Assembly: GCA_044892505.1 (NCBI GenBank)
Contig: CM097882.1
Span: 282,162,001-282,226,000, forward strand
From: Schmidtea nova
Lineage: Eukaryota
Length of the DNA: 64,000 nucleotides
Direction: 5' to 3'
This document shows, piece after piece, positions 3,565 through 61,658 of this stretch. The notes under the pieces were generated by a model, which saw only the letters and a program-made list of their open reading frames with translations, made no database searches and had not been told where the DNA came from. How positions within the stretch are numbered: position 1 is the first letter of the stretch; the number at the start of each line of letters is the position of its first letter. Position numbers and translations under genes: made by a program.

Positions 3565-4830
3565 ATGATTTATTGTCACGTTATTATGAATTCTAAAGCT
3601 GCTGTAAGACAAATTAAAGTAATTCCAAAAAAATTAAATGGCGCATTTGTTGGAATGCAATGCGTACAGGAGTGTAACACTAACGCGTGGTTGGAGAATA
3701 TCCTTCCAATAATGCTCGCTGGCATGCAACCAAGGGATGAATTCAACGCTGATGAATCAGCTCTCTTCTGGAAGATGCTACCTGACAGAACGTTTGCTTT
3801 TCGTGGTGAGAAATGCCATGGTGGAAAAAGGAGCAAAGATCGAATTACTGTTTTGCTCGGATGCAATATGGATGGTACAGAACGTCTGAAGCCCCTGATT
3901 ATTGGCATGTTCGAAAGACCCCGTTGTTTCAAAGGATTGAAAGTCCAAAGTGTGATATACAGACAACGGTTATAATTGTGAAATGATTTTGTCTTTTCAT
4001 GCAGGCATAACCACAACGCTTGGATGACATCGTCCATATTCTCAGAATGGCTGAAAATGATAAATGCAGACTTCCGTCGACAGAACAGACATATTCTTCT
4101 GTTCATTGACAATTGTGTGGCACATCCCAGTGGCCAGGAGCTGTCTAACATCCGTGTTGCCTTTCTGCCCCCCAAAACAACCAGCAAGCTGCAGCCTCTA
4201 GATCAAGGTAGTATAGCTGCTGTGAAATGCACTTACAGGCGAGAACTGGTTCAACGCATTGTGGATATGATCGATTTGGGGGAGACTGTGCAGGACTTCT
4301 CTTACAAATTTTCTCTCTTCTATGCGATCATGCTACTGGTTGAATCCTGGAACAGCGTCTCTCAGACATCCATCAGCAACTGTTTCCGCAAAGCCGGATT
4401 CATCCTGCCGCAATTGAAAGTGGACGAAGAAGCAAATGAAGAGGAAGGCATAATGGTGCCCCGCAACATATGGGACAGACTTTCGGAGATCCTCCATCTG
4501 CCAGCTCCAATGGAGTTCCGCGAATTTGTCAACTTGGATGCTGATACACTTATCACTTGTACAATGACGGACAAGGACATTGTGGCAACGGTGCAAGGTA
4601 CTACACCCAGTACTACACCCGAGGTTTCAGAGCAAGGCACACAGTTGACGATTCCTTCAGCTGCAGAGGTAGCAAAAATGCTTAAGTGTCTTAAAGTGTA
4701 TTTCAGTGCCAGATCAACTGACCCCTGTACTCCTCTTAACGTCATTTCTTCTCTCACACGTGAACTTCATAACACACGTACAGCAAATCTTACACAAACA
4801 TCTATTACTGATTATTTTAAGCATGACTGA
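3565..4830 (+). pseudogene. pogo/Tigger transposase (DD30D), N-terminal HTH not found
   Basis: FNADESALFW, LFIDNCVAH and LQPLDQG motifs with 30 residues between D2 and D3; C-terminal QTSITDYF; two same-frame ORFs separated by a 36-nt GT...AG segment carrying two stops. Confidence 0.9.
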
Positions 4831-5217: not shown

Positions 5218-8200
5218 AGTTATATATTTAAATTAACTGGTGTTTTAATAATTGATTATTTGGCACTTTTTATAAAATTTTAACTGAAATAAATCTATGA
5301 AGGAATTGCAGTCTCTTAAAACCGAGTTTGATTTAACTGGCGACCACGCCGAAAATCAAAATGTCAATGCAGTTTTGAAATAAACAAAGACGTTAATGGA
5401 ATGCCTACCAAAATCATGATAAAATATGCTCACGCTGAATATCAGACGAAATGATGGACGAGGATCGAAAGAAGCAGAAGAATGGATCAGAGACATAGAA
5501 GAATGACTGTTGACAAATGGACAGCGATTGACAGGCACCTTCGATGTGTTATTAGTGGCAGAAGCTAAGACATTGTGGGGAAACGTCAGAGAAACAGAAA
5601 CAACAGATGTGAAAGCCAAAACTTGGTTCCTAAATACTTTCACAATTACGAAGTCAATTACTGACAAAATCAGAGAATTGGCAATTCTGGAACATGAAGA
5701 TGATGAACGTTTTGCAGCTTTCGAGATTCGATTAAGGAAAGCTTTAGCTGAAGTTATAAATTAAGGACGATCAGAAGAAGATATTGTTCAAGATCTCATC
5801 GCAAATAAAGCACGCGATGCGAGATTAAGGTAGATATTATTGACGAAAATAGAAACAAAAATTGAAGAAACGAGATCATTGGCGAAGATTTTCGATAGTA
5901 ACCAAAATGGAAGCAATAAAACTGAATTGATTAAAGCAATTCTTAAAAGAACATATGCCAGCGTGATTGAGGGAGGGCAAATGAGAATTCAACAGAACTC
6001 TCAAGATACCAGACCTACACCATCACAAAGAAGACAATCAGAAGACCCATTTAGTCATCACAGACCAAGAAGAGATGAACATCCGATACAATTCGAAGAA
6101 AATAACCGCGCTCGACGAGAAGAATTCCCAAAAGAACAATTTTTGAGAAATGTTAGAATCCAAGATGGCTCAGAAAGGAAACTGCCAACAATTTACATGA
6201 AGAATATAGCAAGAAAGATTTATTATGAAAATAGAGGACTACCACAAGCACCGGCTCCAAAATTAACAGTAGGTGATTGTTTTTGCTGTGGCGAAAGGGG
6301 ACACAAAGAATATGAGTGCCCACTGGGAAATAAATACCTGATATGTGGTAAAGAGGGACACGGATTCCGAGATTGTTTTTCGTTACGGAAAGAGGTGCCC
6401 CGTCGATATCAAAGAATAGCGTGCATAGAAAAAGAAGATTCCAAATCTGAAAGAAGAGATTACACCGAAAACAGCCAATATTTCAGAATGGCTCACAGCG
6501 ATATGGAAGATAGATACAATGTTCCTGAAAAATATACTACATTGAGAGAAGACGGAAAAAACATCAGCGACTCCATGGGTTTCATTTCGTCGGTGGAGTC
6601 AAGGCAATAAATTATGAAAGAAGAAATGAACGAAGAAGAGACGAGGCAGAAGAAGAGATGTATCAGACGAAGGATGGAAGAAGTTGGAGTAAAATAATGT
6701 TGAATAATACAGAAGTAGATATGTTATGGGACTCTGGAGCGTCAGTAACAGTCATGAGCAAGAATTTGTAGGTGAGAATAGGCAAACCAGACCTTCAACG
6801 TAGTACTATGTTATTATGTGGCGTATTTTCAACTGGAGGTGAAGAGGCAATGGGATATATGAATTTATCGGCCACATGGAATCAGAAGACCAAAATTATC
6901 ACAGTAGTGGTTGTAAAAGAGATCGAGCCCGAATTCCTAGGGCGTATTGATACAATGAAAGAGTTTGGAGTTAAGTTAGTGAAGATCAATAATATTGAAA
7001 CCTAATACATAAACAAAATCCACACTGATGAAGAAAGAATAAATAAAGCACTGATGGCGATGGCAAGTGAGGATAATAAAGGCATTGAAGGAATGATCAG
7101 GAAATATGGTGAAATCTTTATGGCGTCGAAATTTGATTTGGGATTTACAAATTTAGTTCGACATGAGATGCGGATAACAGGAGGCCCAAATGCAATATCC
7201 TCGACGTCAACCAATACAAATGGAGAAAAAGATTGAAAAACTGATAAAAAAAATAATAAACGCAAATGTTATTCGGTGTTGCAAGAGTCCTTGGAATGCC
7301 CCGTTAGTTATAGTAGGGAAGAAAGATGGATCCATCAGGATGTGTGTAGACTATCGTGGATTGAATGCCATAACAGAAAAGGAATCATTTTCGATGCCTA
7401 ATACCAAATTCTTACTAGACTCTCTTGCAAATGCAAAAATATTGATTTAGGCCAGGCATACTATCAAGTAGAGTTGGCCCCAGAAATTCAGGAAATGACT
7501 GCATTCAGTACAATAGAAGGACAATTTTGCTTTAACAGACTACCGTTTGGCCTAGCAAGAGTTCCTGCGACATTCCAGAGACTGATGCACAAAAGTACTA
7601 GAAGAAATGCTATTCAAAAAAGTATTTGTTTATTTAGATGATATTTTGATTTATGGGAAAAGCCAAAAAGACCACGATGAGCTACTAGGGGAAATATTTA
7701 GAAGAATTAAAATGGCAAGACTGAAGATAAATCCAGAAAAATGCGAATTCAATAAAACAGAATTGTGTTTCCTTGGACACATAGTTAACGTAAAAGATAT
7801 CCAGACAAACAGAAAAAGAGTTGAAGAGATCGAGAAAGCAGAAATACCAAAATGTTCAAAGCAATTCGTTTCTCGGATTAACGAACTACTATAGAAGATT
7901 CATTAAAGACTATACTAGAATCGCAGAACCACTATATGCCGCATCATCTGGATGTGATAAAGATTTAATTTGGACTAAAGAATGCAATGAGAGTTTCCAA
8001 ACACTGAAGGAATGGTTGTGCGAGGCACTTATCCTTGATTATCCAAGAGAAGATAGGACATTTATCTTAGACACAGACGCTAGCTTTGGAGCTATTGGTG
8101 CAGTTTTGAGCCAACTTAAAGAAGATGGAGAAGAATCTGTTATAGCTTATGGTTCGAGACATATGACATCACATGAAAAGGGTTACTGTGTAACCAGGAA

Positions 8201-9828
8201 AGAACTGCTCGTTGTACATGAGTATGTCATACATTTTAGAGAATATCTTTATGGAAAGAAATTCATAATTTGCATTGACCACAAAGCTTTGGTTTTCATG
8301 AACACTACAAAAACACCAATCAGTCCGCAGTTTCAAACATGGTTAGCTAACCTGTCTGAATATGATTTTGAACTAAAATATCGGAAAGGTGAAGAACATT
8401 CGAATGCAGATGGGCTATCAAGATTAAAAAGTATGATTTGTTCCCAGTGTCAAACAAGACATGAAGATGCCAAGGAAGGAAAGTCAAAAATCAGATATAT
8501 ATATATATATACTATCCAAAGAACAGAAGCTATGGAAAAGTATTGTAGCAACAGCAGAAGGACATTAGGTTTCGAGAGTTACGAGAAATATTAGAAAATG
8601 GATGCGCACGGGAAAAAAATTTTTTTCCCATTTAACGTAAAAAATACACGAATAGATGGAGGATTAATAGCAGTAAAAAAGAACGAAAATATTTTGATGT
8701 TAGTTCCAGAAACCTTTGCAGGCTTATTAACAACAATCCTACATGAAGAATTATGTCATATTGGAGTTAAGAAACTATTCCATTATATGGAAAAGATATT
8801 TTATTAACCGAAGATGCAAGAAACAATTCAGCTCTGTTTACAATGTTGCAATATCTGCTCTAAGAGAAAGATTGATCAGACAAGAACCAAAGAAATATTT
8901 ATCTCTAGATGTAGTTCTGAATTCCTAAAACAAATTGTTATGGATGTGGCCTACATGGAGAAAAACACCATTAAAAATATATGTTAGTAATGGTGGACCG
9001 GTTTAGTAAATTGATTTCTTTGACCGCAATCACGAAGCAAGACGAAGGAACAATTTTCAAACGATACTTAACAGTTGGATCTATCGATTCGGAAAACCAA
9101 AGAGCATTTTAACAGATAGAGGACGCAATTTCGAAAGGAATTTTCTAAGACAGAGACTACAGAAACTTGGAATCAAACAGTAATTTAGCTCACTTTACCA
9201 GCACCAATCAAATGGATTAGCCTAACGAGCCATACGAACGGTAAGAGATCTTATTACAGCGACATTGGCAGGTGAGTGTGAAGAGAGAAACTGGCATGAA
9301 CTTTTACCTAGAATAGAGTTCTGTATAAATAGCAGCCGACAGAGTGCTACAGGTCTATCACCATTTGAGATAATTTATGGACGGAGTGTTAACCTACATT
9401 CAAACCTGAAACAAGCAGATATATCAAGAAGCGAATGGATAGAAGACGCAAGATATAACTCGATTAAAGCAGCAGACACTATGAGAGCTATGGATAAGGC
9501 AAATAGAGGCACTCGTGTTTTTGAGGGGGGGAGGTACTCGTACGCAAAGAACCGCAGAACAGGCACAAGGATGGTATGCAGTACGATGGCTCATATAAAA
9601 TCATCAGATTTCTATCACCTCATCGAGTTGAACTACATTCGCAAGAAGGAATGAAAGAAAGAAGAATCGAGTGGCTGAAGAAGTGGAAATATCCTTAAGA
9701 AGGGGAAAGTTATATATTTAAATTAACTGGTGTTTTAGTAATTGATTTTTTGGCACTTTTTATAAAATTTTAATTGGAAGAAATTTATGAAGAAATTGCA
9801 GTCTCTTAAAACCGAGTTTGATTTAACT
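5218..9828 (+). mobile_element. Full-length but degenerate Ty3/Gypsy LTR retrotransposon (element A) with 121-bp LTRs
   Basis: LTRs 5218-5338 and 9708-9828 (AGTTA...TAACT, 7 differences in 121 bp); PBS TGGCGACCACG; PPT AAGAAGGGGAA; TSD ATTAC; order gag(CCHC)-PR-RT-RH-INT. Confidence 0.95.
5361..9654 (+). pseudogene. gag-pol of Gypsy element A, multiple frameshifts and stops
   Basis: CFCCGERGHKEYECP knuckle; protease LWDSGAS; RT SPWNAP, MCVDYRGLN, VYLDDIL; RNase H DTDAS, DHKAL, NADGLSR; integrase HEELCHIG...C..C and GLSPFEIIYG. Confidence 0.92.
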
Positions 9829-13274: not shown

Positions 13275-14700
13275 ATCGAAAAAGACATGCTTAATTAATC
13301 ATCTAAAAATTCATGTCAAGAGAAAATTCAATACATCAAACAGGAAAGAAAACTCCATGAATTATCCAACCCAACAGATGTATCCAATTGGTCAGTCGAA
13401 TCAGATCTCGAATAAGTCTGTTGAATATTTAAAACAACCAATCCAGTCATCATTCATAAGTGAAGAAGAAGCTTTCCAAAACTCGAATTTAATAGCAAGT
13501 AATTACCAATCAATCCCACAAACAAATGATTCTCAATTTCTTCCAATTTTCGATGGGAATTATCCAGCATATTTGCCTCAAAATCTCAATGGACAAATCA
13601 ATACTCCACTCTATCCAATGCCGAATATCAATCCCATTCCGAATGCTAACAATGCAATTAACTACCAATTCAATTACACAACTAATGAAACCGGGCCGGA
13701 TGGATATTACATAGGATTACAGAATTCTAATTTCATTAACAATTCCGATTATTACCGAACAATGGTCAACATGAATCATTTGCATTCATTTTTACCGCAA
13801 ATGAATTACCAATCCAACCAAATAGCCGTTTTAAACAACATCCAAGTCAATTCAATTGAACCAACGAATTATCTCAACAGCAATTACATCAATGTCAGTT
13901 CAAATAATATTGAATCGGTTAAGGCCGCAGCCGCCGCATCAAACGAAATGAATCAAATCATTCAAAAGCGAATTGTTCATTATCAAGACAAAAGCGTTTC
14001 ATATAAATCTCAGGAAAATTACCGAAAAACTTTCAAATCAACTCGAAATAAGACGAAATCAATTTCATTGATAAAAACAAATCCCGTAAATTCATTCGAA
14101 AACAGCAATAGAAACAAATCATCGACAATGATGCATCGAACGACAAATCAACCAATCAACAACGAGTCGTCAGAATCGAATATTTCCAATGGACAAAGCA
14201 TTGATTTGCTTGTAACGAATCTTGATTATAATATCAGTGCGAAAGAATGGAGAAAATTGTTGCTTAATCAATTTCAAAATGCAATTAAACGAGTTCACAG
14301 TGTTTTGATTCAAACCCAACCCGATGGATCGAACTGTGGTATTGTGAGATTGGCCAGCATGGAAGATGCCAGATTGGCTATTTCTCAGTTTCATCGAAAG
14401 AAAATCGGCTACAAACGAATACAAGTTAATCTTGTGAGTAATAATGCAATTCCCTCACCGAATAATATCAAGCAAGAAGTTGCGACTTTATTGAAATCTG
14501 TAGCCGGATATTCGCTGTCGGTTTATAAATTTATGGAACTTTATGAAAAAAAATACCACAGAAGCATATGCATTTCGGATTTTTATAGGATGAAAGATTT
14601 TGTGGAAATCAAGGACGTCGGAGGAAATCAAAACTGGAAGATTATCAGCTTGACAAATACTGCAATCAATTCGATTACGCAAGCAATAAATCCATCAGAA
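13275..14700 (+). CDS. MARF1: MARF1/Limkain-b1-like, first visible exon: N/Q-rich region, RRM and LOTUS repeat 1
   Basis: DLLVTNLDYNISAKEW...AISQFHRKKIGYKRIQV resembles MARF1 RRM2; IKQEVATLLKS...KFMELYEKKY is an OST-HTH start; donor GAA|GTATGT at 14700/14701. Frame stays open upstream of ATG 13357 to a candidate acceptor TTTAG at 13274. Confidence 0.88.
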
Positions 14701-14989
14701 GTATGTTGATTGCAATAAAAGTTTTAAGTTTTTTTATCAATACGGGGAATCAGCGCAATAATAAGGCCGTTTGGCGTCCACAGCAAGAGACACATTTTCA
14801 ACATCACCGAAATATCAAAAACATTATGCACGAACAAGCATAAAACATAAGCAGTTAACAAATTAACACTTAAAAGATTCAGTCGCAAAATTTATTATTT
14901 TAATGAAAAAATTTGATCCATTGTCTTAAAAAATGAAAATTGAAGAAAATAAAAGATCTAAAGTGATCAAATTTAAAGATGTTAATAAT

Positions 14990-49531: not shown

Positions 49532-52500
49532 TAATTAATTAAATTATTTTTAATTTAAAAGGAGTTTAGGAACTCTTTACATCTCCTTTTTTTAAAATAT
49601 TTAATCCTTTCAATATTTCTGATTATATTCTTCCCATCCTTGTTTTCTAATAAGTAACTTTTTTCATGAATTTGTTTTTTACTGTATATGGACCTTCATA
49701 CCTCTCGTGGTCTTTATTTCGAATTTCCTTTTTTACTAACACTCCTTTTCTAATTTCTAATTCTCTTTTTGTTTTGACTTCCTTTTCCTGTCTTTTATCT
49801 TCTAATCTCTGCATAATGTCTTCTCTATTTATTTTATTATTAACATGCCATTGCAATCTATTAATCTTTCTTCCAAAAATAATTTCAGCTGGGCTAACTC
49901 CAGTAGTTTTCTGAGCTATCGCATTTAAAGTGTATTCTATATCAGGTAATAATTCTGCCCAATTTTTCTTCATTCAATCATTTATGTGTTAATATAATCT
50001 CTAATAGTTCGAAACTGTCTTTTAACTAAACCATTGGTATTATGGTAATACGGACTTGAAAATATTAACTCTATACCTGCTGTCTTTGCCAGTTTTTTAA
50101 TGCTATTTGCTTCGAAATTCTTTCAACAATCAACATGTAATTATTTAGGTGCCCAAAATTTAAGTATCCATTTACGTAACAAAAATTTTCCTATTGTTTA
50201 TTTCATCCTGTTTACTAATAGCAATTAGTCAAATATATTTACTGTAATGATCAATTATAGCAGAAATATATTTATCTCCCTTAAATGTTTCTGTTAAAGG
50301 TCCATAGATATCCATGTATATTTTTTCAAAAGGTTCAAAAGCTTGAATGACTTTGGTTTCTTCTTTAGACTATGTGGTCATAACTTTGTTTTTCTGGCAT
50401 GATTCACATGTAAAGATAGTCGCCTTAATTTCCTTTGCCAAGTCTAACATATCAAAATTGTTCTGAATGTATTTCATTACTTTTTCTACCCCTGCATGAC
50501 ACAATAGCAAATGTGTTTTCTTTATCATTTCTAATCTTTTAATTTCTGGTATCCATATTTTCTCTTTATTCGTATAGACTATATTATTTTTTATATAAAA
50601 TTTATCCTTTTCATTTCTATTAATTCTATCTTTTATATTTTGTATCTCTGCATTATTCTTTTGCCATTCTGTCATCAAAGTTAACAGCCTAGTTTTTAAT
50701 TTTCCTGATTTTCGATTTTCATGCTCCATTGCACATTGTACACATTTTACGCAGATATTTCTAGAAAGCATATCTGCATTAGTATGCGCAGTACCTTTTC
50801 TGAACTCCATTTTTATGTCCAAACTACTTAAATAATTTATCCATGTTTGGAATTGTGCTGTTATTGGATTTTTTGTCGTTAACATAAAAGTAATCGCTTT
50901 ATGGTCAGTTTGTAAGATAAATCGTTTACCAAATTAAAATAATGATTGAAATGACGACAAAAAATAGTAAATAGCCAAATGTTCCTTTCGTGTAATACAA
51001 TATCCTCTTTCGTGTTAGCCCATTGCATGTGACAAATATGCTAAAACATGCTCGTACCCCCATTCATCAGTTTGCGATAAAACTGTCCCAATCGTATCAA
51101 AACTTGCGTCTGTGTATAATATAAATTCCTTCCTGAAATCTGGGAATACAAGAACTGGTGAATACAAGACCTTTTCACATTCCTCAGTTCAAATCATATT
51201 TTCATTGCTATTTCCGCATATATTTTTCTAAGGTTCTTTTTTTCTTTGCATAATCCCTAATAAATCTGCGATAATAATTACATATATCCAAAAACCTCAA
51301 ATTTTTTATACATTTTGGTTTTTGAAATGACTGGATCGCTTCAATATTATTTTTGTCTGTACTTACTCCTTGGCTGTTTATAACGTGACCGAAGAATTTA
51401 ACTTCATCTTTTAGTAACTGACACTTTTCAGGATTAATTTTTAATATTGCCTCCAATATTTTCTCTAACACTTTTTCGAAAGTCTTGTAGTGTTTCTGTA
51501 CAGTTTTTGTAAAAATCAAAATATCATCTAAACACACCATTACCCCTTCTTTATTTAGATCTTTTAATACTTTTGTCATTAATTCTTGAAATGTGCCTGG
51601 CGCAGCTGCAATGCCTAATGGAATTCGATTAAAACAAAATTTGCCTTCTTTAGTAGAAAAAGCAGTCTTTCCTTGATATTCAATATCTAATCTTACTTGA
51701 TAATAAGCGTTCCCGAGATCTCTAGAACTAAAGTATTTAGATCCATGTAGTGTATCTAAGATTTCTTCAACGTTCGGCATTGGAAAAGCTTGTCTTTCGG
51801 TAATTTTATTCAGTTGTCTAAAGTCTAAACAAAGTCTAATATCTTTTTTTCTCTTTTTTTCACACGCATACTAAAGGTGTATTCCAAGGCGTGTTAAATT
51901 TCCTTATGATATCATTATTTTCTAAATTTTTTATTGCATTATTTATTTTCTCCTCTAAATTGATAGCTGTTCTCTCGTCTTTATCATTATTAGTTCACCT
52001 TTTGTAATAATTTTATGTTCAATTAAATCCGTACATCCAATATCCCACTAATCTGTCATAAAAACATTTATATTTTTCTTTACAATTTCTAAAAGTTTAT
52101 TATTCTCGTATAATTTTAAAGTTTCTATTGTTTTCTGTAGCTATCGGGGTTCCAACCTTCGTTGGCGATACCCCTAAAACAAAAGTCAATACGATAAAAT
52201 ATAACATTTATTTAAAAGGTTTCTTCTTGTGCTTCTTTGAAACTGCTTCTTTCTTCGTGTNNNNNNNNNNNNNNNNNNNNNNNNNNNNNNNNNNNNNNNN
52301 NNNNNNNNNNNNNNNNNNNNNNNNNNNNNNNNNNNNNNNNNNNNNNNNNNNNNNNNNNNNNNNNNNNNNNNNNNNNNNNNNNNNNNNNNNNNNNNNNNNN
52401 NNNNNNNNNNNNNNNNNNNNNNNNNNNNNNNNNNNNNNNNNNNNNNNNNNNNNNNNNNNNNNNNNNNNNNNNCTCAGTATTTGTAATATTTCTTCCAAAT

Positions 52501-53553
52501 TAGCTTCTATTTCACATATAAAATCATTCAATCTTTCACATTTACCCTCTATATATCTTAATTCTATTCCAAACTGTTTCTGCAATTCCACTCCTCCAAT
52601 TATATCCGGGACAATGTTTGCAACTACAATAAATGTTACTTTTCTTGCTATATTACCAATTCTAACATCAATTTGTATCTTTCCTACTGTTTCCAGTATG
52701 CTATCATTTGCACATCTTAATTTATAGTTTGTCCTTATTATTTCAACATTTTCTAATTTATCCACAACTGATTTAGTCATAACATTCATTCCATTTTATG
52801 GAGCTGAATTTCAAAAGTTGTACTTGGTCTATCTTGCATTTTATTACATGTCAATCGTGGCTCTTCCCATTCTTCTTCAGTGAATATATTTTGCTTCTCC
52901 TTAAAATTTGATTTAACCAATATTTCATTCATCCATATTTTATTATTTTTCTCTGTATTCTCTAATTTTTTTAAAAACTTAAACTTTTTCTGCTATTATT
53001 TCATTACTACATTCTGTTTTTTTAATTTATTATCTTTTTGATCAGTATTAAAAAAATTACGTACATTAAGTACATTACTACTTTTTAAATTACATATTTT
53101 TTTAGATAAAGTTTTTATACTATTATATATAAGTATTATACATAAGAATTATTTACATCATTATTAAAACTATGGTCAATATCTGCACTAATATCAAAAT
53201 TACCTAATAAATTGCTCCGAACATTGCCTCTCGTGTCAAAGCGTGTCCTTTTGGGTGCTGGACGTCATCGCATTTGTCCTCAGAATCATCAGAATAGTCC
53301 ATTGGCATCATTTCATCCTTAGCTTAAATAGCTGCTACTGTTTATTGGTGGTGTTGATTCCTCTGTTGATATCTCATTGATCGATTTGGATAGAAATTAT
53401 GGTTTCCTCCATTCTGATAAGTTCCAAATCTTCTTCTTTCTAAGTTGGTACAACAATCATTTTCTTTGTGTCACGAATTTGACATCTTTGACATTGACTT
53501 GTTGGTCATTCTCGATGTACATGCCATTCCACTCCACATACTGAGTTCTTACA
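49532..53553 (-). mobile_element. Ty3/Gypsy element C, 5' part missing
   Basis: PPT AAAAAAAGGAGA then 3' LTR start TGTAAAGAG at 49581 running into a gap; INT, RH and RT (VCLDDIL) ORF pieces; gag zinc-knuckle remnants up to about 53553. Confidence 0.88.
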
Positions 53554-53828
53554 ATTTGAATAAAATAAAAACTTTTTAAAAATCTAAAGTACAAAGGTAA
53601 GATTTGGTATCATTCGAAAGGCCTTTACAAGCTGCATACGATAGTCTTATTTTTGAAGGTGTGTAATCGAAAAATAAAATTTTGAAACAAAAAAAAATTC
53701 AACTTTTTTCAAACAAATTATATATAGTTGAAAAGGTTTTTTCATGGTCATAACAAACAAGGCTCAAAATATTTAAAACTATGTATATCAAAAGTTAATA
53801 GCGTTGATGGTGTGCAAATATAATTTCA

Positions 53829-53997
53829 AACCTTTCATAAGCAACGACATTGCAAGTTAACAAAGACATTGCAAGGCAGATGCAAGTTAACAAAGACATT
53901 ACAATGCCGATGCAACTTAACAAATACATTGCAATGCCAATGCAAGTTAACAAAGACATTGCAATGCCAATGCAAGACAAATTTATAAAGAAATGTA
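53829..53997. repeat. 30-bp minisatellite (TGCAAGTTAACAAAGACATTGCAATGCCAA); inverted arrays at about 55405-55570 and 56455-56620, remnants at 54390-54580
   Basis: Directly visible tandem units; they explain the MQVNKDIAIQ / MSLLTCICIA repeat ORFs. Confidence 0.9.
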
Positions 53998-54692
53998 NNN
54001 NNNNNNNNNNNNNNNNNNNNNNNNNNNNNNNNNNNNNNNNNNNNNNNNNNNNNNNNNNNNNNNNNNNNNNNNNNNNNNNNNNNNNNNNNNNNNNNNNNNN
54101 NNNNNNNNNNNNNNNNNNNNNNNNNNNNNNNNNNNNNNNNNNNNNNNNNNNNNNNNNNNNNNNNNNNNNNNNNNNNNNNNNNNNNNNNNNNNNNNNNNNN
54201 NNNNNNNNNNNNNNNNNNNNNNNNNNNNNNNNNNNNNNAATTTTTAAAACTATATATCATTAGAAAGGTATTTAAGATGTGAGTATGGTGGTCATATCCT
54301 CAAATCTTCAAGATGTCAAAAAATAATTAAAATACCTCTGCGTAATATATATTTATTTTCCCACCAATTTTGAAACTGCAATCCATGTGCAATATTAACA
54401 AAGACATTGCAAGCCCAATTAACAAAGACATGCATGCAAGTTAATAATAATAATATAATTTTGACACTGCAATCCATGTGCAATATTAACAAAAACATTA
54501 CAATACATATGCAAGTTAACAAATACATTGCAATACCCGTGTAAGCAAAATTAACAAAGACATATATGCAAGTTAATAATAATAATAAAAATAATAATAA
54601 TAATAATAAAAATAAAAATAAATGTTAAATCTATGATGAAATTATCCAGTTTTATTATGACTCCTAATGATATTGATTCTACTGAATTCAAT

Positions 54693-54938
54693 ATGAATAC
54701 CATTTTCTGGTCATGCATGGAATTTCTACTTGGAAAATACCGTACTCTTATTCGAACTTTCATGCGGAATGCGGATATTTAAGAGGTAAATGTCAACAAA
54801 AAATTGAAAGAAACCAAACAAAGATTTCTCACATGTTCAATATGTAATATCAATAAAGTTTGCATTTTATATTTACCTTGTGGACATGTCATTATTTGTT
54901 CAAAATGTTTAAAAAACATGAATAAGTGTGAATCTTGT
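54693..54938 (+). pseudogene. IAP-type RING finger (C3HC4) remnant with weak BIR-like sequence upstream
   Basis: KLKETKQRFLT-CSICNINKVCILYLPCGHVIICSKCLKNMNKCESC has exact IAP RING spacing C-x2-C-x11-C-x-H-x3-C-x2-C-x6-C-x2-C; in-frame stop at 54780; C-terminus replaced by (TA)n. Confidence 0.7.
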
Positions 54939-54974
54939 AGTATATATATATATATATATATTGATGAATATCAT

Positions 54975-55028
<54 letters not shown>

Positions 55029-55788
55029 GTTGTATAAAATATATGTATTTTCATCTAATTTTACTAAAACAGATTGTCAAAAAGCTTTCCACTCAAACAT
55101 AAAATTAATAAAAGTTGACTAGATAATATAAATTTACTGAATTCATAGCTCGATTTACTAGCTGATATATAGAAAATTGTAATATTTTACCAATGATACT
55201 GAGAAAATGATCATTAATTTACTAAATTTTCAACTAGCTTTTATTGATACACAGAATTTTTTTTTTGAATTTATTTTCGACAATATCACATTACCAATTT
55301 TGTAGATATAGAAATAATTATTTACTGATACAATTTAATCAATGATATTTTTAGCAGAACCTTGTTAGGACGCACTTTGTGATTTATTATTATTATTATC
55401 ATTATTATTATTAACTTGCATATATAACTTTGTTAATTTGGCTGGCATAGGTTTTGCAATGTCTTTGTTAACTTGCATCTGTATTGCAATGTCTTTGTTA
55501 ACTTGCATCTGTATTGCAATGTCTTTGTTAACTTGCATCTGTATTGCAATGTCTTTGTTAATATTGCACATGAATTGCAGTGTCAAAATGGGTAGGACAA
55601 TAAATATATATTACGTTGAGGTATTTTAATTATATTTTTTGATATCTTGATGGTTTGAGGATATGATCACCATTCTCAAATACCTTTCAAATTATATATA
55701 TATATAGTCTTAAAAATTTGAACCCTTGAATGTTTTTAAAATTTTATTATTATATTTTATAACTTTTGGAAATGTTTATTAGTTAAGC

Positions 55789-55827
<39 letters not shown>

Positions 55828-55879
55828 CTTTTTTCACCTTTGATCTTTTTTTATTATTATTATCAATAATTCTCATAAT

Positions 55880-56300
55880 GACTATAGATCAAATTTTTTT
55901 TATAAACATTAACACAATATTTCGGCACAGCCTTTATCAAGTGTTTTTATAAAAATTTTTTTTATAAACAATAACTTTTTATAAACAATAACCGTCCATC
56001 AACATTCAATTCGCACAAAAAAATTAAAATAAATTTTTTAATCCAATAAAATCATTATAAAATATTAAAAAAATAATTAAGGTTACTATTTAGGATTAAG
56101 TAAATATAACGATAGAAAAAAATTTTCTATCGTTATATTTACTTAATCCTAAATAGTAACCTTAATTATTTTTTTAATATTTTATAATGATTTTATTGGA
56201 TTAAAAAATTTATTTTAATTTTTTTGTGCGAATTGAATGTTGATGGACGGTTATTGTTTATAAAGTTATTGTTTATAAAAAAAATTTTTGATCTATAGTC
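55880..56300. repeat. About 420-bp near-perfect palindrome centred near 56120
   Basis: GACTATAGATC...GTAAATATAACGATAGAAAA | TTTTCTATCGTTATATTTAC...GATCTATAGTC; same family as 35430-35515 and 40814-40978; (ATT)n tract at 55790-55828. Confidence 0.9.
55911..55945 (-). ncRNA. Minimal hammerhead-like motif, family 2 (U3-A8 core)
   Basis: AACAC UUGAUAA A GGC UGU GCC GAAA UAUU GUGUU; helix I co-varies with the 40.8 kb copy (AACAC/GUGUU versus UACAC/GUGUA). Confidence 0.65.
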
Positions 56301-56918
56301 NNNNNNNNNNNNNNNNNNNNNNNNNNNNNNNNNNNNNNNNNNNNNNNNNNNNNNNNNNNNNNNNNNNNNNNNNNNNNNNNNNNNNNNNNNNNNNNNNNNN
56401 NNNNNNNNNNNNNNNNNNNNNNNNNNNNNNNTTACATATCTTTAAAAATTTGGCTTGCACAGGTATTGAAATGTGTTTGTTAATCGGGTTTGCTTACAAT
56501 GCACGGTTATTGCAATATCTTTGTTAACTTGTATCTGTATTGCAATGTCTTTGTTAAGTTGTTTTGGCATTGTAATGCCTTTGTTAAGATTTTTTGGCAC
56601 TGCAATGTCTTTGTTAATTATGTCATTGTTTAAAAATTATAGTTGCACATCATCTACGCTTTTGATATACATAGTATGTATATTTTGAGCCTTGTTTGTT
56701 ATGAGCATGAAAAAACCTTTTCAATCATATATAATTTGTTTGAAAAAATTTGAAGTTGTTGTTTTTGTTTAAAAATTATATTTTTCGATCACACACCTTA
56801 AAATATAGCGTAATCGTGTTCAGTTCACGAAGGCCTTTCGAATGATACCAAAGTTGACTTAAAAAAAATTGAACTTTTTATTTTTATCTAAAGATTTTTT
56901 TTATCATACACCTTAAAG

Positions 56919-57978
56919 CAGCGCTTCTCAACCTTTCTGTTATTGCGACCCAGTTTACCAACGTAAATATTCTCTCGCCCCTCCCCCTTTTTGATCTATC
57001 GAAAATTATAGTGTCATAATGAAAACGGTCCAATATTTGTGCATTTAATTTTATTGGTTTGCTTTAAATGCACAGTAATGTATACGTCTATCCCTACTCT
57101 TTATACCAACGCCTACTAAAACACAGGCCTAACACAAATAGTGGGAGGTTGGGGTATTGTCCCGTCTGCTAATTCCGAATGCATATGAGTTTCGGGAGGT
57201 TGTCATTGTATGTGTGTGCAGTATGTGGGCAACTAGCACCGCCTGGTGGTTAGAATCATAAACGTTTGACAGATGTTACTGCACCGCCGCAATACGTGAT
57301 CGGTCGTCTCGCGCTCACGAATGTGGCTGTATGGAATGTGACCATCGCTGTGAACGCACGGAACCTCTGCTAACATATTATCAGCATATTTCAAAGCATA
57401 TCGATGTTCCTAGAACATAGAACCCTATAACTCCAAGCTAGCGACATGTATGATAGAAGAGCAAGGCGTACGGTAGCATGTTTATGTCACGTGGTTCGTA
57501 CGAATTTGGATGACGAGTTTGCGACATTAAAACGAAGACCTTTCCAAATACTTTTACCGTTTTCAACATCTTATCTTTACGAAACCGGGTTTTCTGCGGT
57601 GGCTTCGTTGAAAACAAAATACAGATCACAGCTAATTATAGAAAAGGAACTTAGGGTATCCATATCTGGTATTACTCCTTCATTTCAAAAACTTTGCAAT
57701 GAGAAACAGGCTCAAGGAAGTCATTAATTATTAACAATACCATATTTAACTGGTATTTGTTTCATACTAATAAACTTAAATAATAAATATAATAAATTAT
57801 TTATTGGTAATATGTAATTATAAACTGTATTCTTATTTTAAATAAATATATATATATATATATATAAATTTTTTAATTATACAATTTCTTTTATTTGACC
57901 TTCAACAAAGTTTTAATTTTGTTTTTAAATATACTCGCGCCCCCCAAAGGGGGCGCCCCTACAGGTTAAGAATCGCTG
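56919..57978 (+). mobile_element. Non-autonomous Buster/Charlie-type hAT element
   Basis: TIRs CAGCGCTTCTCAACCT / AGGTTAAGAATCGCTG; 8-bp TSD CCTTAAAG/CCTTAAAA (NNNTANNN); retains the dimerisation-domain tail LLPFSTSYLYETGFSA...KQAQGSH (57446-57727). Confidence 0.9.
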
Positions 57979-58081
57979 CCTTAAAAAATAATACCATCGT
58001 GTGCAGCTCGCGAAGGCCTTTCGAATGATATTAGATTTTACCTTGGTACTTTAAATTTTAAAAATTTATTTAAATTTGAAA

Positions 58082-58266
58082 TGAGTCATCGATGCGTCAT
58101 CGGATGAGTCATCAATGAGTCACCAATTTAAAATTTTAAAAAACTTTCGATGAGTCATAGGTAAGTTATCGGTGAGTCCGAAAAATCAATAAATTTTTAA
58201 AAATAATGAAAATTGAAAATTTTTAAATGATGACTCATCGATGAGTCAAAAAATTTTGATGAGTCA
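58082..58266. promoter_or_regulatory. Cluster of seven TGA(G/C)TCA (AP-1/TRE consensus) motifs
   Basis: Perfect matches at 58082, 58105, 58116, 58151, 58231, 58242 and 58260, plus two near matches; function not shown. Confidence 0.35.
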
Positions 58267-58412
58267 TAGATTGGTAAAAAACTTTTTAAAAAAGATAAAA
58301 TTTTTTTAAAAATGCCCTTTCGTCTACTCAGATTTTTTACCCTCTTGGAGGCTTTGTTAAAAAGTGCCCAACGCGTGTCTTTGTCTTTGACTCTGCACAT
58401 CTACCTACTAAT

Positions 58413-59420
58413 ATGGCTACTCGGAGAGAGCTTACCGACTTTCAGAAAGGCATTATTTATGGCTGTTACCTTTGTGGAAAAAGTCAGGGTGAAACTGCTG
58501 TATTGACTGGCCATCCCAAAGGAACTATTAACTACTTCCTGAGGAAGTACCCCCAGGAGCAGACACATGTCAACAAGCGACGTTCAGGACGCCCTAAACT
58601 TCTGAGTATCCGTACGCAACGGCAGCTGAAACGACTTGTGGTGGCTCATCGTTGGTTCCCCTGTCCAAGTTAGTGTCAACATTTATCACTGACCCAGTGC
58701 ATGCCAGCATGTCCACCATTTGTCGCGCATTACATTTTCATGGTTTCAATGGCAGATACTGCACAAGGGAGCCTTTGAATACAGAAACAATTCGTCGTCG
58801 TAGTGCCGGGAGAGAAGGAGTTGGACAGCAGCACAATGACGCTTAGTCATTTGGAGTGATGAATCACGTTTCACTCTTTTCAAATCTGATGGACAGCAAT
58901 TCTGCTGGCGCGTATAAGAGAACGATTTCACCCCGACTACATTCAGCCAACTGTGAAATATGGAGGAGGCTCCATCATGTTTTGAAGTCTTGTCTCAGCT
59001 CGTGGAACTGACCCTCTAGTGAAGTTCAGCAATCACATGACGTCAGTGGAAAACCGTGCCATTCTGGAAAATAAGCTTGTTCCCTTTCTCCCAGAAATTG
59101 AGGGGCTCATTTTCCGACAGGATAATGCACCAATCTATACTTCGCATATTATGAAGGAATTCTCTTTGCAGCACGGCATCAAAGTTTTGGATTGGATCCC
59201 ACAAAGCCCTAATCTGAATCCTATTGAGTTTCTGTGGGACGTCCTTGGTAGACTAGTTCGCAAAAGGGTTCCCATTGCCCGTAACTCCTCCGAACTGGAA
59301 ACGCATCTGCATGAGGAATGATCACATATCTCCCCTGATTTCCTGGAAAGTGGTCGATACAATGCCTAAACGAGTGCGACTTGTTATCCAGATGAAAGGT
59401 AATATAACGAAATACTAACT
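58413..59420 (+). pseudogene. Tc1-like transposase (DD34E), frameshifted
   Basis: RSGRPK, WSDESRF, QPTVKYGGGSIM, QDNAP...SPNLNPIE with 34 residues between D and E; TIRs not identified. Confidence 0.9.
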
Positions 59421-59559: not shown

Positions 59560-60200
59560 GATATTTATATAGATATATCGATTTGGTAAACTAGTATTGA
59601 TAATCAGTATTTTAATAGATATAAGGAAAGATTTTGAAAATGCCTATATGAAAAAATATGGCAGACTTAAACATTAAACAGGAATTCGCATCCCCATACC
59701 AACATCAATCAAATGGACTAGCTAAAAGTTTAATACGAATCGAGAGAGGCATGATAACAACATCGTTAGAAAGGAAAGGGAAGAAAATTAAATTGATTGG
59801 AATTACTAAAACGAATTAGCTTCAGTATTAATGCAACGCAGAAAAGCTCCGTAGAATTTTCACCATTTGAAATATTATATAGAAAATTCAGTCTACAAAA
59901 AATGTTCAAAAAACAAGTATATCAGAGTTTATTAATAAAGCCAGAATAAATATAAAGAAAGCGTCCATAAATACAAGTTAATTTGAAAGTGGAAACGGGT
60001 GTCAAAAGACTTTTAAAAAGGTAAATGGGTTTTAGTTCGAATAGAACCACAAAAGTCAGAAAATCGTATAAAGGACAATTTTAAATAGTTAGATTTATCT
60101 CTTCTCATGAAGTGAAGCTTAAGTGCTCTAACGTGATAAAACAATGAAGAATCGAATTTCTGAAAAAGTGAACAAACTCTAAAAGAAGGATATCATTAAA
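59560..60200 (+). mobile_element. Degraded Gypsy integrase fragment
   Basis: Broken-frame WIYRFGK, QEFASPYQHQSNGL, FSINATQK..VEFSPFEI. Confidence 0.7.
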
Positions 60201-61658
60201 TATATCAATGTTTTAATAATCAGTGTTTGTTTGAATAATAAATGTTTATTTTGAATTTTGAAGTATATTTTTAATGAATGAAATTAAATTCATAACTTAA
60301 ATAATTAGACAAATATTAGTTCGAAACATTTTATTAAATAACTAATAATTCTATACAAAAAAATAAATATATTACTGTAACTAAAATTATTCATAGATTT
60401 TATAATTTTTCTATATTATGTGTACTTTGCTTTGAATCACTACATATAGTTACCTGAGCTCGGTATTGTATTCTTTTTGCTTGAAATTTAGCTTACTAAG
60501 TTACATTGCTAACTTGAAGCACTTGCAAGAAAATTTTATGGGTGATCTGACTAAAATATTCTATAGTATTGGCGCCAAATTTTAAAACTTGAAATTTGTT
60601 ATTGACAAGCTTCAGTTACAAATATTACCCACTTGAGTCAGACAAAAATTATTTTTGTTTTTAAACTTGAATTGCTTTCTAATTTCATGACCTCCGTTAG
60701 TTATTAATTTGTTTTAATTAAACAAAGAAAATTTTTAGTAAATTATTATAAAATATTTTTCCATTAGTTTCGAATTAAAATTAATTTACTTAATATATTT
60801 TCTAAATTAATTACATAAAATAATTGTCAGAATCCCATAAAATTTTCTAATATACAGTTTATAAAATAAGATTTTATGCAAATTTCAATCACTAATGACT
60901 TTATAGACATTTGTTTGTTCATTACGTTTACTTTGTACATATAAGGTCCCGTATCTAACACTACTTTTGTCGCCGATAATAGGTGTATTGGGTTTATTGA
61001 CTTCTTACATAGCACTAATTATTTGTTTTAATGCAAATAAATGTCAATATTATGGTATGCATAAGTCAGGAAAAACAGGGTCCGCTAAAACATACAACTC
61101 ACTCTACTCACCTTTGTGATCACAAAGAGAAGCTCACTTGAACATCAAATAAGTTTACGGAAATATCAGTTAGGTGCAATCAAAGAAATGCTTGTGGTAA
61201 TTGAAATTGTTTTAGACACTTCAACTGAAGCACAATTTCCATTTTCACAAGTCTAAATTGACGGATCACTTGGAAAATAATGATTGAACTAAATTCTCAT
61301 CAGAATTTATTCGACTTACAATTTTGAACTTTAATTTGTAGTCATATTTGTTGGACTCAAAAGATCTTTTTTGACCTACAATATATTTACAAAAAAACTA
61401 CTTAACACATGAAGTACCAACTATTCAGTGGCACTTAGTACTTAAAAAGGTACCAGATATTCGTATCTTAAAATTTTATGATAAAAAGGCGGTCTTTTGG
61501 TTTAGATGATATCTGTGCCAGCCATCTAACGTATGGCCTCCCAAGCATGTCATGGCTACCTCTTGGTAGCCGTTGCATTAGACATAAATAATGACAGTTT
61601 TTAATTAAATTAAATTTTTAAATTCACAGTAAACTACCAATCTTTTTACTTTCTTCAG

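What the first reader, a model, noticed from the sequence alone, without database searches (positions are those of the whole stretch)
53554..58075. Foldback-type element with minisatellite arms carrying an IAP-like (anti-apoptotic) RING cargo
Seen: symmetric order X-Y-[cargo]-Y'-X' with both arm modules ending in 30-bp tandem repeats and starting with a TATCATT(C/A)GAAAGG motif; the centre encodes an IAP-type RING with the typical preceding LKE helix and a weak frameshifted BIR-like stretch (FWSC.GISTWK...FHAECGYL). The left edge truncates Gypsy C gag. Established: Drosophila FB-NOF has tandem-repeat inverted arms around a cargo gene; IAP genes are captured by baculoviruses, and I recall an IAP-like cargo reported for the planarian giant retroelement Burro1 (verify). 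Inference: an undescribed DNA-transposon vehicle spreading IAP/RING genes; this copy is a pseudogene.
Basis: partly seen in the sequence, partly recalled or inferred. Interest (0 to 1): 0.75.

Follow-up and report, generated by a model that had tools for sequence, protein, structure and literature searches.

The report
Inverted-repeat junk holding a RING gene remnant
A decayed hairpin-shaped repeat in an AT-rich, transposon-filled animal genome encloses a broken piece of a small RING ubiquitin-ligase gene of a kind carried by giant Burro-like retroelements; it is not an IAP with a BIR domain, nothing shows the structure to be a gene-spreading transposon, and it is fairly ordinary.

Summary
The structure is real. 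Four modules with 30-bp minisatellites lie in the order X-Y-centre-Y'-X', and a fifth partial copy, X'', lies further right. None occurs elsewhere in the 64 kb. The RING is real: Pfam zf-C3HC4_3 is above its cut-off, and the nearest solved structures are the cIAP1, cIAP2 and XIAP RINGs.

The "frameshifted BIR" is not real. The quoted stretch is in the same frame as the RING. The whole 116-codon remnant aligns in one frame, without a frameshift, to the C-terminal part of a BIR-less family of small proteins with a helical domain and a RING (52.6% identity, E 3e-36).

The only family member with known context is the last accessory ORF behind a 4844-aa Burro-like Gypsy polyprotein.

The inner arms are 88% identical and the outer arms 77%. 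This favours nesting of two foldback-like repeats over one two-module vehicle. Both gaps separate the outer arms from the inner block, so the outer symmetry depends on the scaffold. The inner structure lies in contiguous sequence.

No target-site duplication, transposase or second copy could be found, so mobility is untested.

Verdict: a decayed foldback-like repeat holding a retroelement-derived gene fragment. Interest is low to moderate.

The parts
53551..53997 (+). Module X (outer left arm): about 300 bp of unique sequence with the 18-nt head motif at 53608-53625, then a 30-bp array at 53851-53976. Its inner end abuts gap 1.
   Evidence: The outer boundary is only approximate, because homology among X, X' and X'' fades in AT-rich sequence.
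53998..54238 (.). Assembly gap 1 (241 N), between X and Y. It was not filled or looked up.
   Evidence: Y/Y' homology runs right up to the gap edge, so the outer end of the Y arm is hidden.
54239..54620 (+). Module Y (inner left arm): a unique part, a 30-bp array at 54470-54536 and a trinucleotide run at its inner end.
   Evidence: 88% identity to Y'.
54621..55383 (+). Unique, non-palindromic centre (763 bp, 23% GC). It has no other copy in the window apart from microsatellite matches.
54630..54974 (+). Remnant of a small RING E3-ligase gene, given as one part. It spans about 116 codons in a single frame, corresponding to residues 83-194 of the 198-aa relative P0001. Breaks by count: 1 truncation at the 5' side, 1 in-frame stop, 0 frameshifts, 1 short in-frame microsatellite insertion, and loss of the native stop.
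   Evidence: tblastn gives 52.6% identity and E 2.8e-36. The pieces align colinearly. PF13920 matches.
55384..55718 (-). Module Y' (inner right arm), with a 30-bp array at 55454-55584.
55719..56300 (.). Spacer with no counterpart visible on the left. It holds a (TTA)n run, a 44-bp flank shared with 40930-40978, and a 421-nt near-perfect hairpin at 55880-56300 that abuts gap 2.
   Evidence: (I1), and (DNA fold -184 kcal/mol, z -38).
56301..56431 (.). Assembly gap 2 (131 N), between the hairpin and X'. It was not filled or looked up.
56432..56904 (-). Module X' (outer right arm), with a 30-bp array at 56508-56617 and the head motif at 56830-56847.
   Evidence: 77% identity to X.
56905..58072 (-). 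X'', a third copy of X that keeps only about 130 nt of the head (motif at 58013-58030). It directly abuts the outer end of X' and is split by the TIR element below.
   Evidence: (82% over 94 nt).
56919..57978 (.). A 1060-bp non-autonomous TIR element nested in X''. It has 15-nt terminal inverted repeats and 8-bp flanking duplicates (7 of 8 identical) at 56911-56918 and 57979-57986. It is not part of the arms.
   Evidence: Read directly. It has 37% GC against 24-28% for the arms. Its 93-aa ORF has no Pfam hit. The hAT-like assignment comes from my memory only.

Best explanation
The locus is an old, non-coding, foldback-like inverted-repeat structure. It is built from two kinds of module, each about 0.4 kb, that share a 30-bp minisatellite.

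A younger inner unit, Y-centre-Y', is at least 1.48 kb long, has arms 88% identical and lies wholly in contiguous sequence. It sits inside an older pair, X...X', that is 77% identical.

The 763-bp centre holds a 5'-truncated, stop-bearing remnant of a small gene with a helical domain and a C-terminal RING. The remnant is in a single frame. This gene family lacks BIR. Its RING is of the dimeric IAP/IDOL type. I infer that the gene is carried as the 3'-most accessory ORF of Burro-like giant Gypsy or endogenous-retrovirus elements.

The "cargo" is therefore best read as a retroelement-derived gene fragment trapped between the arms. It got there either because the arms' element landed in or around the 3' end of a Burro-like copy, or because the fragment was captured as filler at the breakage-prone centre of the hairpin.

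Today nothing here works. There is no intact ORF and no transposase.

Shown: the architecture, the arm identities, the RING family membership, the absence of BIR, and the context of one relative.

Inferred: the order of events, the retroelement origin of this particular copy, and any past mobility in trans. Conservation of the 18-nt head motif and the 30-bp units is compatible with protein-binding sites.
For: - All 16 minisatellite cores and all head motifs lie within 4.5 kb, and none lies in the other 59 kb.
- Arm mismatches are 100 of 439 for X/X' against 40 of 327 for Y/Y'. By my arithmetic this is a difference of about 3.9 standard errors, so the inner pair is younger.
- The RING remnant aligns in one frame to P0001 residues 83-194 at E 2.8e-36. 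The pieces on either side of its single stop align colinearly.
- The family alignment shows shared non-BIR motifs ahead of the RING.
- P0024 aligns over its full length with P0002 at E 3e-16.
- P0024 is the last ORF after a 4844-aa polyprotein with a Monjiviricetes-type fusion domain, protease, RT, RNase H and integrase. This matches the published Burro layout: a 4873-aa ORF1 with env in frame, BIR and RING motifs, and accessory ORFs (PMC6431247).
- The nearest solved RINGs are cIAP2, cIAP1 and XIAP at E 2.5e-7. By fold the nearest are IDOL and the cIAPs.
Against: - The Burro link rests on one contig from another organism. P0024 shares 45% identity with the window over the RING only.
- No Burro-like pol or LTR lies next to the remnant on its strand in this window.
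- The family could also include host genes.
- Nesting is not proven. If the hairpin repeat and its flank at the right are a later insertion, the X-Y spacing would be similar on both sides: 241 N on the left, and 117 nt plus 131 N on the right. Gap lengths are only estimates. Similar spacing would fit one long composite arm, with stronger arm-to-arm homogenisation near the centre explaining 88% against 77%.
- No target-site duplication could be defined.
- Only one locus was seen.
Confidence: 0.55

Rival explanations
1. One reading: X-Y-centre-Y'-X' is one non-autonomous foldback-type DNA transposon with two-module arms. It transduced a RING gene and spreads it, and this copy is a decayed one.
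For: - The order and orientation of all four modules are symmetric, and the modules cluster in 4.5 kb only.
- Y/Y' homology runs into gap 1, so X and Y could be one continuous arm.
- The remnant keeps nearly the whole conserved core of the short family members. It lacks only about 13-21 residues relative to P0007 and P0002.
- The remnant has few breaks.
Against: - Outer and inner arm identities differ, 77% against 88%.
- The unique parts of X and Y are essentially unrelated.
- There is no target-site duplication, no transposase and no second copy. Neither arm motif occurs in the JGI metagenome contigs, and the arm-array peptide has no relatives. These are weak negatives, because the source genome is not in those collections.
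- There is no BIR.
Confidence: 0.15
2. This is a local inverted duplication, that is, palindrome formation by fold-back repair or replication, of a stretch that already held X, Y and half the centre. No transposon is involved.
For: - The modules are absent from the rest of the window.
- The X-Y spacing on the two sides is possibly similar.
- X'' abuts X' in tandem, which looks like local rearrangement rather than transposition.
Against: - The 763-bp centre is unique and not palindromic.
- A single duplication predicts equal divergence of both arm pairs, which is not seen.
- The 18-nt head motif is kept exactly in three copies that are only 77-82% identical overall. This suggests constraint or a family with many members.
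Confidence: 0.15
3. The outer symmetry is a scaffolding artefact. The 2062-bp block between the two gaps is misplaced or is a collapsed repeat contig, so only Y-centre-Y' is a real unit.
For: - Both gaps start within 1 nt of the homologous inner end of X and X'.
- The block ends in a 98% identical hairpin that abuts gap 2. A related hairpin at 40814-40929 also abuts a gap.
Against: - X and X' are themselves in contiguous sequence on either side and are inverted relative to each other whatever lies between them.
- Arms at 77-88% identity are far too diverged to be assembly palindromes.
Confidence: 0.1

Closest known systems
Foldback elements (Drosophila FB and FB-NOF) and foldback-like long-TIR elements such as Galileo
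   Same: Both have long inverted arms that contain tandem sub-repeats and enclose a variable, sometimes gene-bearing, middle. Both are non-autonomous in most copies. This description of FB and Galileo is from established knowledge and was not tested here.
   Different: Here each arm has a 160-300 bp unique outer part and only 2-4 units of 30 bp on its inner side. No transposase, target-site duplication or second copy is known. There is no sequence relation to any named family, and none could be tested because no repeat library is at hand.
Gene-fragment-carrying TIR elements (Pack-MULE-type transduplication)
   Same: A non-coding inverted-repeat shell lies around a truncated, non-functional piece of a gene from elsewhere.
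   Different: The source gene here appears to be a retroelement accessory gene rather than a host gene. The hallmarks of the MULE superfamily are not seen.
Burro / GYPSM1 giant Gypsy-like retroelements of planarians (PMC6431247)
   Same: These carry apoptosis- and ubiquitin-related motifs (BIR, a RING-containing motif, BCL2-like) and accessory ORFs. A family member of the window's RING gene is the last ORF of an element with that layout.
   Different: Only a 116-codon remnant is present here. It is flanked by minisatellite arms rather than by pol or an LTR. Identity to the Burro-linked relative is 45% over the RING only.
IAP proteins (BIRC2/3, XIAP, BIRC7) and IDOL/MYLIP RINGs
   Same: Both have a zf-C3HC4_3 RING at the extreme C-terminus, preceded by a long helix and ending in a short hydrophobic tail. 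These proteins are the best sequence and fold matches. Of the 150 closest RING relatives, 37 carry BIR.
   Different: There is no BIR domain in the remnant or in its closest family. The N-terminal helical domain (pLDDT 85-97) matches nothing in the PDB or BFVD at E <= 0.001.

Membership tests
IAP (BIR-containing) proteins | At least one BIR domain | tested here: not met
   Pfam finds no BIR at E <= 10 on the upstream pieces. None of 37 BIR-bearing relatives gives an HSP in the centre outside the RING frame. The stretch read as BIR is homologous to a non-BIR region of P0001.
IAP (BIR-containing) proteins | C-terminal RING of the zf-C3HC4_3 type | tested here: met
   PF13920 scores 34.8 bits against a cut-off of 27. 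The best PDB hits of the relative P0001 are the cIAP2, cIAP1 and XIAP RINGs.
Small helical-domain + RING family (P0001, P0002, P0007, P0015, P0006, P0024 and others) | Colinear homology over both the pre-RING region and the RING | tested here: met
   tblastn: P0001 83-194 at E 2.8e-36, P0002 22-127 at E 1.5e-19, P0007 14-106 at E 3.3e-21, all in one frame. Supported by the alignment A2.
Burro-like giant Gypsy element (as the source of the RING) | The RING gene lies as an accessory ORF downstream of a giant gag-env-pol polyprotein | tested here: inconclusive
   This is met for the relative P0024 on its own contig. It is not met in this window, where no pol or LTR lies next to the remnant on the + strand. 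Further contigs were deliberately not looked up.
Foldback-type transposable element | Long terminal inverted repeats containing tandem sub-repeats | tested here: met
Foldback-type transposable element | Target-site duplication at defined termini | tested here: inconclusive
   The outer ends of X, X' and X'' cannot be placed to the base. The outer end of Y is hidden in gap 1.
Foldback-type transposable element | Multiple dispersed copies, or polymorphic presence or absence | not testable with these tools
   There are no further copies in the window. There are 0 hits in JGI metagenome contigs. No collection at hand holds this genome.

The most novel reading that the evidence does not exclude
Y-centre-Y' is a true non-autonomous foldback-type DNA transposon of a flatworm that picked up a nearly complete small RING E3-ligase gene from a Burro-like endogenous retrovirus. 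Other copies, some intact and expressed, exist in the genome. That would be gene traffic from a giant retroelement into a DNA-transposon shell.
Probability: 0.12. Interest if true: 0.55.

Novelty: new member of a known kind. Interest (0 to 1): 0.3.

Why it matters
Taken at face value, the locus adds a foldback-like repeat with 30-bp minisatellite arms to the repeat catalogue of an AT-rich, Burro-bearing genome that is probably a planarian. The literature search found no such repeat described for planarians.

The locus also points to a small family of BIR-less proteins with a helical domain and a RING, linked to Burro-like elements. These could belong to the ubiquitin- and apoptosis-related equipment of those elements.

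It does not give evidence for a new vehicle of IAP genes. If arms and RING were found to recur together, the case would become a documented hand-over of a retroviral accessory gene to a DNA transposon, which would be of moderate interest to transposon biologists.

Tried and rejected
- The search for homologous proteins with the 77-aa RING ORF found nothing. The low-complexity tail made it a poor query, and only proteins of 0.55-1.75 times its length were seen.
- The peptide encoded by the Y' minisatellite found no relatives.
- The 20-nt minisatellite core and the 20-nt head motif each had 0 hits in JGI metagenome contigs. These collections do not hold this genome, so the negative is weak.
- An Rfam scan at permissive E-value and a tRNA scan of 53000-58600 found only sub-threshold hairpin matches at the palindrome centre. 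This rejects a SINE or ribozyme reading.
- Foldseek of the P0001 model against PDB and BFVD matched only the RING part, with no hit at E <= 0.001. I had considered a CARD or UBA reading of the helical domain, and it has no support.
- X as the natural 5' LTR or leader of the minus-strand Gypsy fragment to its left is rejected, because X has inverted and tandem partners on the right and only a chance-level match near 43.5 kb.
- Pfam on the ORF inside the nested TIR element found no hit.
- The literature holds no paper on planarian foldback elements.

Slips, stated as required:
1. One search was a look-up of a RING relative. It brought in locus L001, which turned out to be part of a Burro-like, provirus-type element of an animal. 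I had not foreseen this. I stopped such look-ups, never read its DNA, and used only the printed gene table.
3. Some query coordinates, and in notebook entry 1, end next to the remnant's stop. They are not repeated here.
Full report
**Setting.** The window has 30% GC and seven N runs. It is full of transposon debris: RT, RNase H, integrase, CCHC gag, pogo-type DDE_1 and Tc1-type DDE_3 ORFs. It is eukaryotic DNA. Its composition and the Burro link below fit a planarian, but the species was not determined.

**Gaps first.** Gap 1 (53998-54238) lies between module X and module Y. Gap 2 (56301-56431) lies between a hairpin repeat and module X'.
- No ORF of interest crosses either gap. Only runs of X do.
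- The RING remnant, both Y arms and the centre lie in one contiguous block, 54239-56300. The inner structure is therefore independent of the gaps.
- The placement of that block between X and X' depends on the scaffold.
- Both gaps begin within one base of the same homologous inner end of X and X'.
- The Y/Y' homology runs right up to the edge of gap 1.
- Continuity cannot be tested without the hidden letters, which I did not look up.

**The observation.**
- TRF finds 30-bp arrays at 53851-53976, 54470-54536, 55454-55584 and 56508-56617.
- A 19-nt core of the unit occurs 16 times at up to 3 mismatches. All 16 are in these arrays, with + strand on the left and - strand on the right. The expectation is 0.12.
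- X and X' are 77.2% identical over 439 aligned bases. Y and Y' are 87.8% identical over 327.
- The 18-nt head motif is exact in X, X' and a third copy X''. It has 3 mismatches in Y and is more degenerate in Y'.
- The unique parts of X and Y are barely more alike than random window pieces: local scores of 30-46 against a control maximum of 41. The two module types share the minisatellite rather than their whole length.
- None of the modules occurs elsewhere in the 64 kb. The clustering and symmetry are therefore not chance.
- The centre (54621-55383) is unique and not palindromic.

- The right-hand 1.2 kb of the finding is not arm. X'' keeps only about 130 nt of the head, abuts the outer end of X' in tandem, and is split by a 1060-bp TIR element (56919-57978). 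That element has 15-nt terminal repeats and 8-bp flanking duplicates.
- Between Y' and X' lies a spacer that has no visible counterpart on the left. It includes a 421-nt hairpin (55880-56300). A relative of this hairpin sits at 40814-40929, also next to a gap.

**The gene.**
- The RING ORF matches PF13920 above its curated cut-off.
- An exhaustive phmmer search with the RING piece found 165 proteins at E <= 0.001. The best are small proteins of 70-200 aa at 48-67% identity.
- tblastn of these proteins on the window shows a single-frame alignment of P0001 residues 83-194 (of 198) to 54630-54974. Identity is 52.6% and E is 2.8e-36. Similar one-frame alignments hold for P0002, P0007 and P0015.
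- The pieces before and after the remnant's single in-frame stop align colinearly with P0001.
It is homologous to a family-specific, non-BIR region (alignment A2).
- Pfam sees no BIR. None of the 37 BIR-bearing proteins among the 150 best RING relatives hits the centre in any other frame.
- Breaks in the remnant, by count: one truncation at the 5' side, one in-frame stop, no frameshift, one short in-frame insertion of microsatellite origin, and loss of the native stop.

**What kind of RING.**
- The nearest solved structures to P0001 are the RINGs of cIAP2, cIAP1 and XIAP (E 2.5e-7 to 1e-4), followed by MYLIP/IDOL.
- An AlphaFold model of P0001 (pLDDT 79; 85-97 over residues 30-150) shows a helical domain, a long helix and a C-terminal RING.
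- Foldseek matches only the RING part: IDOL, cIAP1/2 and XIAP in the PDB, and viral IAP and RING proteins weakly in BFVD. Nothing reaches E <= 0.001.
- "IAP-type RING" is therefore fair. "IAP" is not.

**Where the family lives.**
- A profile of eight members finds only 13 proteins, nearly all of them single-member clusters on short metagenome or Logan contigs.
- One member, P0024, aligns over its full length with P0002 (E 3e-16) and lies on a 23.5-kb contig. The gene table returned by the look-up shows it as the last of three small ORFs (135 aa, a 379-aa RNase_T ORF, and the RING). These follow a 4844-aa polyprotein with a Monjiviricetes-type fusion domain, protease, RT, RNase H and integrase.
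- That is the published Burro layout: a 4873-aa ORF1 with an env-like part in frame, BIR, a RING-containing motif and BCL2-like motifs, and accessory ORFs that may alternatively be subdomains (PMC6431247).
- Because that contig proved to be part of a provirus-like element of an animal, I made no further look-ups of this kind and did not read its DNA.

**How the structure arose.**
- The inner arms are significantly more alike than the outer ones: 40 mismatches in 327 bases against 100 in 439.
- The simplest reading is two nested foldback-like units of related kind. A younger Y-centre-Y' lies inside an older X...X'.
- One two-module element with inner-biased homogenisation remains possible. If the hairpin repeat and its flank are a later insertion, the X-Y spacing on the two sides would be similar, given that gap lengths are only estimates.
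- A single inverted duplication fits less well. The arm pairs diverge unequally and the centre is unique.
- About 6% divergence per Y arm predicts roughly one stop in 116 AT-rich codons under neutral decay. This rough estimate of my own matches what is seen, so there is no sign of constraint on the remnant since the arms formed.
- No target-site duplication could be defined. No transposase is present. No second copy could be sought, because the collections at hand do not hold this genome.

**Verdict.** This is a real but decayed foldback-like repeat enclosing a fragment of a small RING gene that is probably of Burro-like origin. It is not a BIR-RING IAP and is not shown to be a vehicle. I rate it a new member of known kinds, of low to moderate interest.

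Noticed in passing
window 56919-57978: A 1060-bp non-autonomous TIR element is nested in the third X copy. It has 15-nt terminal inverted repeats, 8-bp flanking duplicates (7 of 8 identical) and 37% GC. Its 93-aa ORF has no Pfam hit. The element looks hAT-like from memory only.
   Followed up: partly
window 55880-56300 and 40814-40929 (shared flank 55836-55879 / 40930-40978): A small hairpin repeat family has the same 11-nt inverted termini in both copies. One copy is a 421-nt near-perfect palindrome (DNA fold -184 kcal/mol). The other is a hairpin of about 116 nt. Each abuts an N run, so an assembly artefact at contig ends cannot be excluded.
   Followed up: partly
window 53997/53998 and 56431/56432; also 40813/40814 and 56300/56301: N runs begin exactly at repeat boundaries. 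Two begin at the homologous inner end of X and X', within 1 nt of each other. Two begin at the termini of the hairpin family. This suggests that what is hidden is itself a repeat or hard-to-assemble sequence. I did not look it up.
   Followed up: partly
window 58081-58286 and 58413-59320: An array of 11-bp and 29-bp repeats containing a TGAGTCA-type palindrome lies just upstream of a decayed Tc1/mariner-like transposase (DDE_3, E 1.2e-8).
   Followed up: partly
proteins P0001, P0002, P0007, P0015, P0006, P0024 (relatives, not in the window): This is a small BIR-less family with a RING and a confidently predicted helical N-domain (pLDDT 85-97). The N-domain has no match in the PDB or BFVD. One member is an accessory ORF of a Burro-like element.
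   Followed up: partly
window 13357-14709 (+) and 38074-38943 (+): Two long ORFs carry LOTUS / OST-HTH domains (MARF1-type). They could be a host gene or transposon cargo, and this is not resolved.
   Followed up: no
window 44010-48087 (-), 50370-51780 (-), 7821-8594 (+), 4024-4830 (+), 59658-59819 (+): The window holds further fragments of Gypsy-like elements (integrase, CCHC gag, RT, RNase H) and a pogo-type DDE_1 ORF. The minus-strand fragment that ends at about 53540 adjoins X with a degenerate Cys/His-rich reading.
   Followed up: no
window 60354-60894 and 39135-39602: A direct repeat of about 0.5 kb, 71-72% identical, of unknown nature.
   Followed up: no
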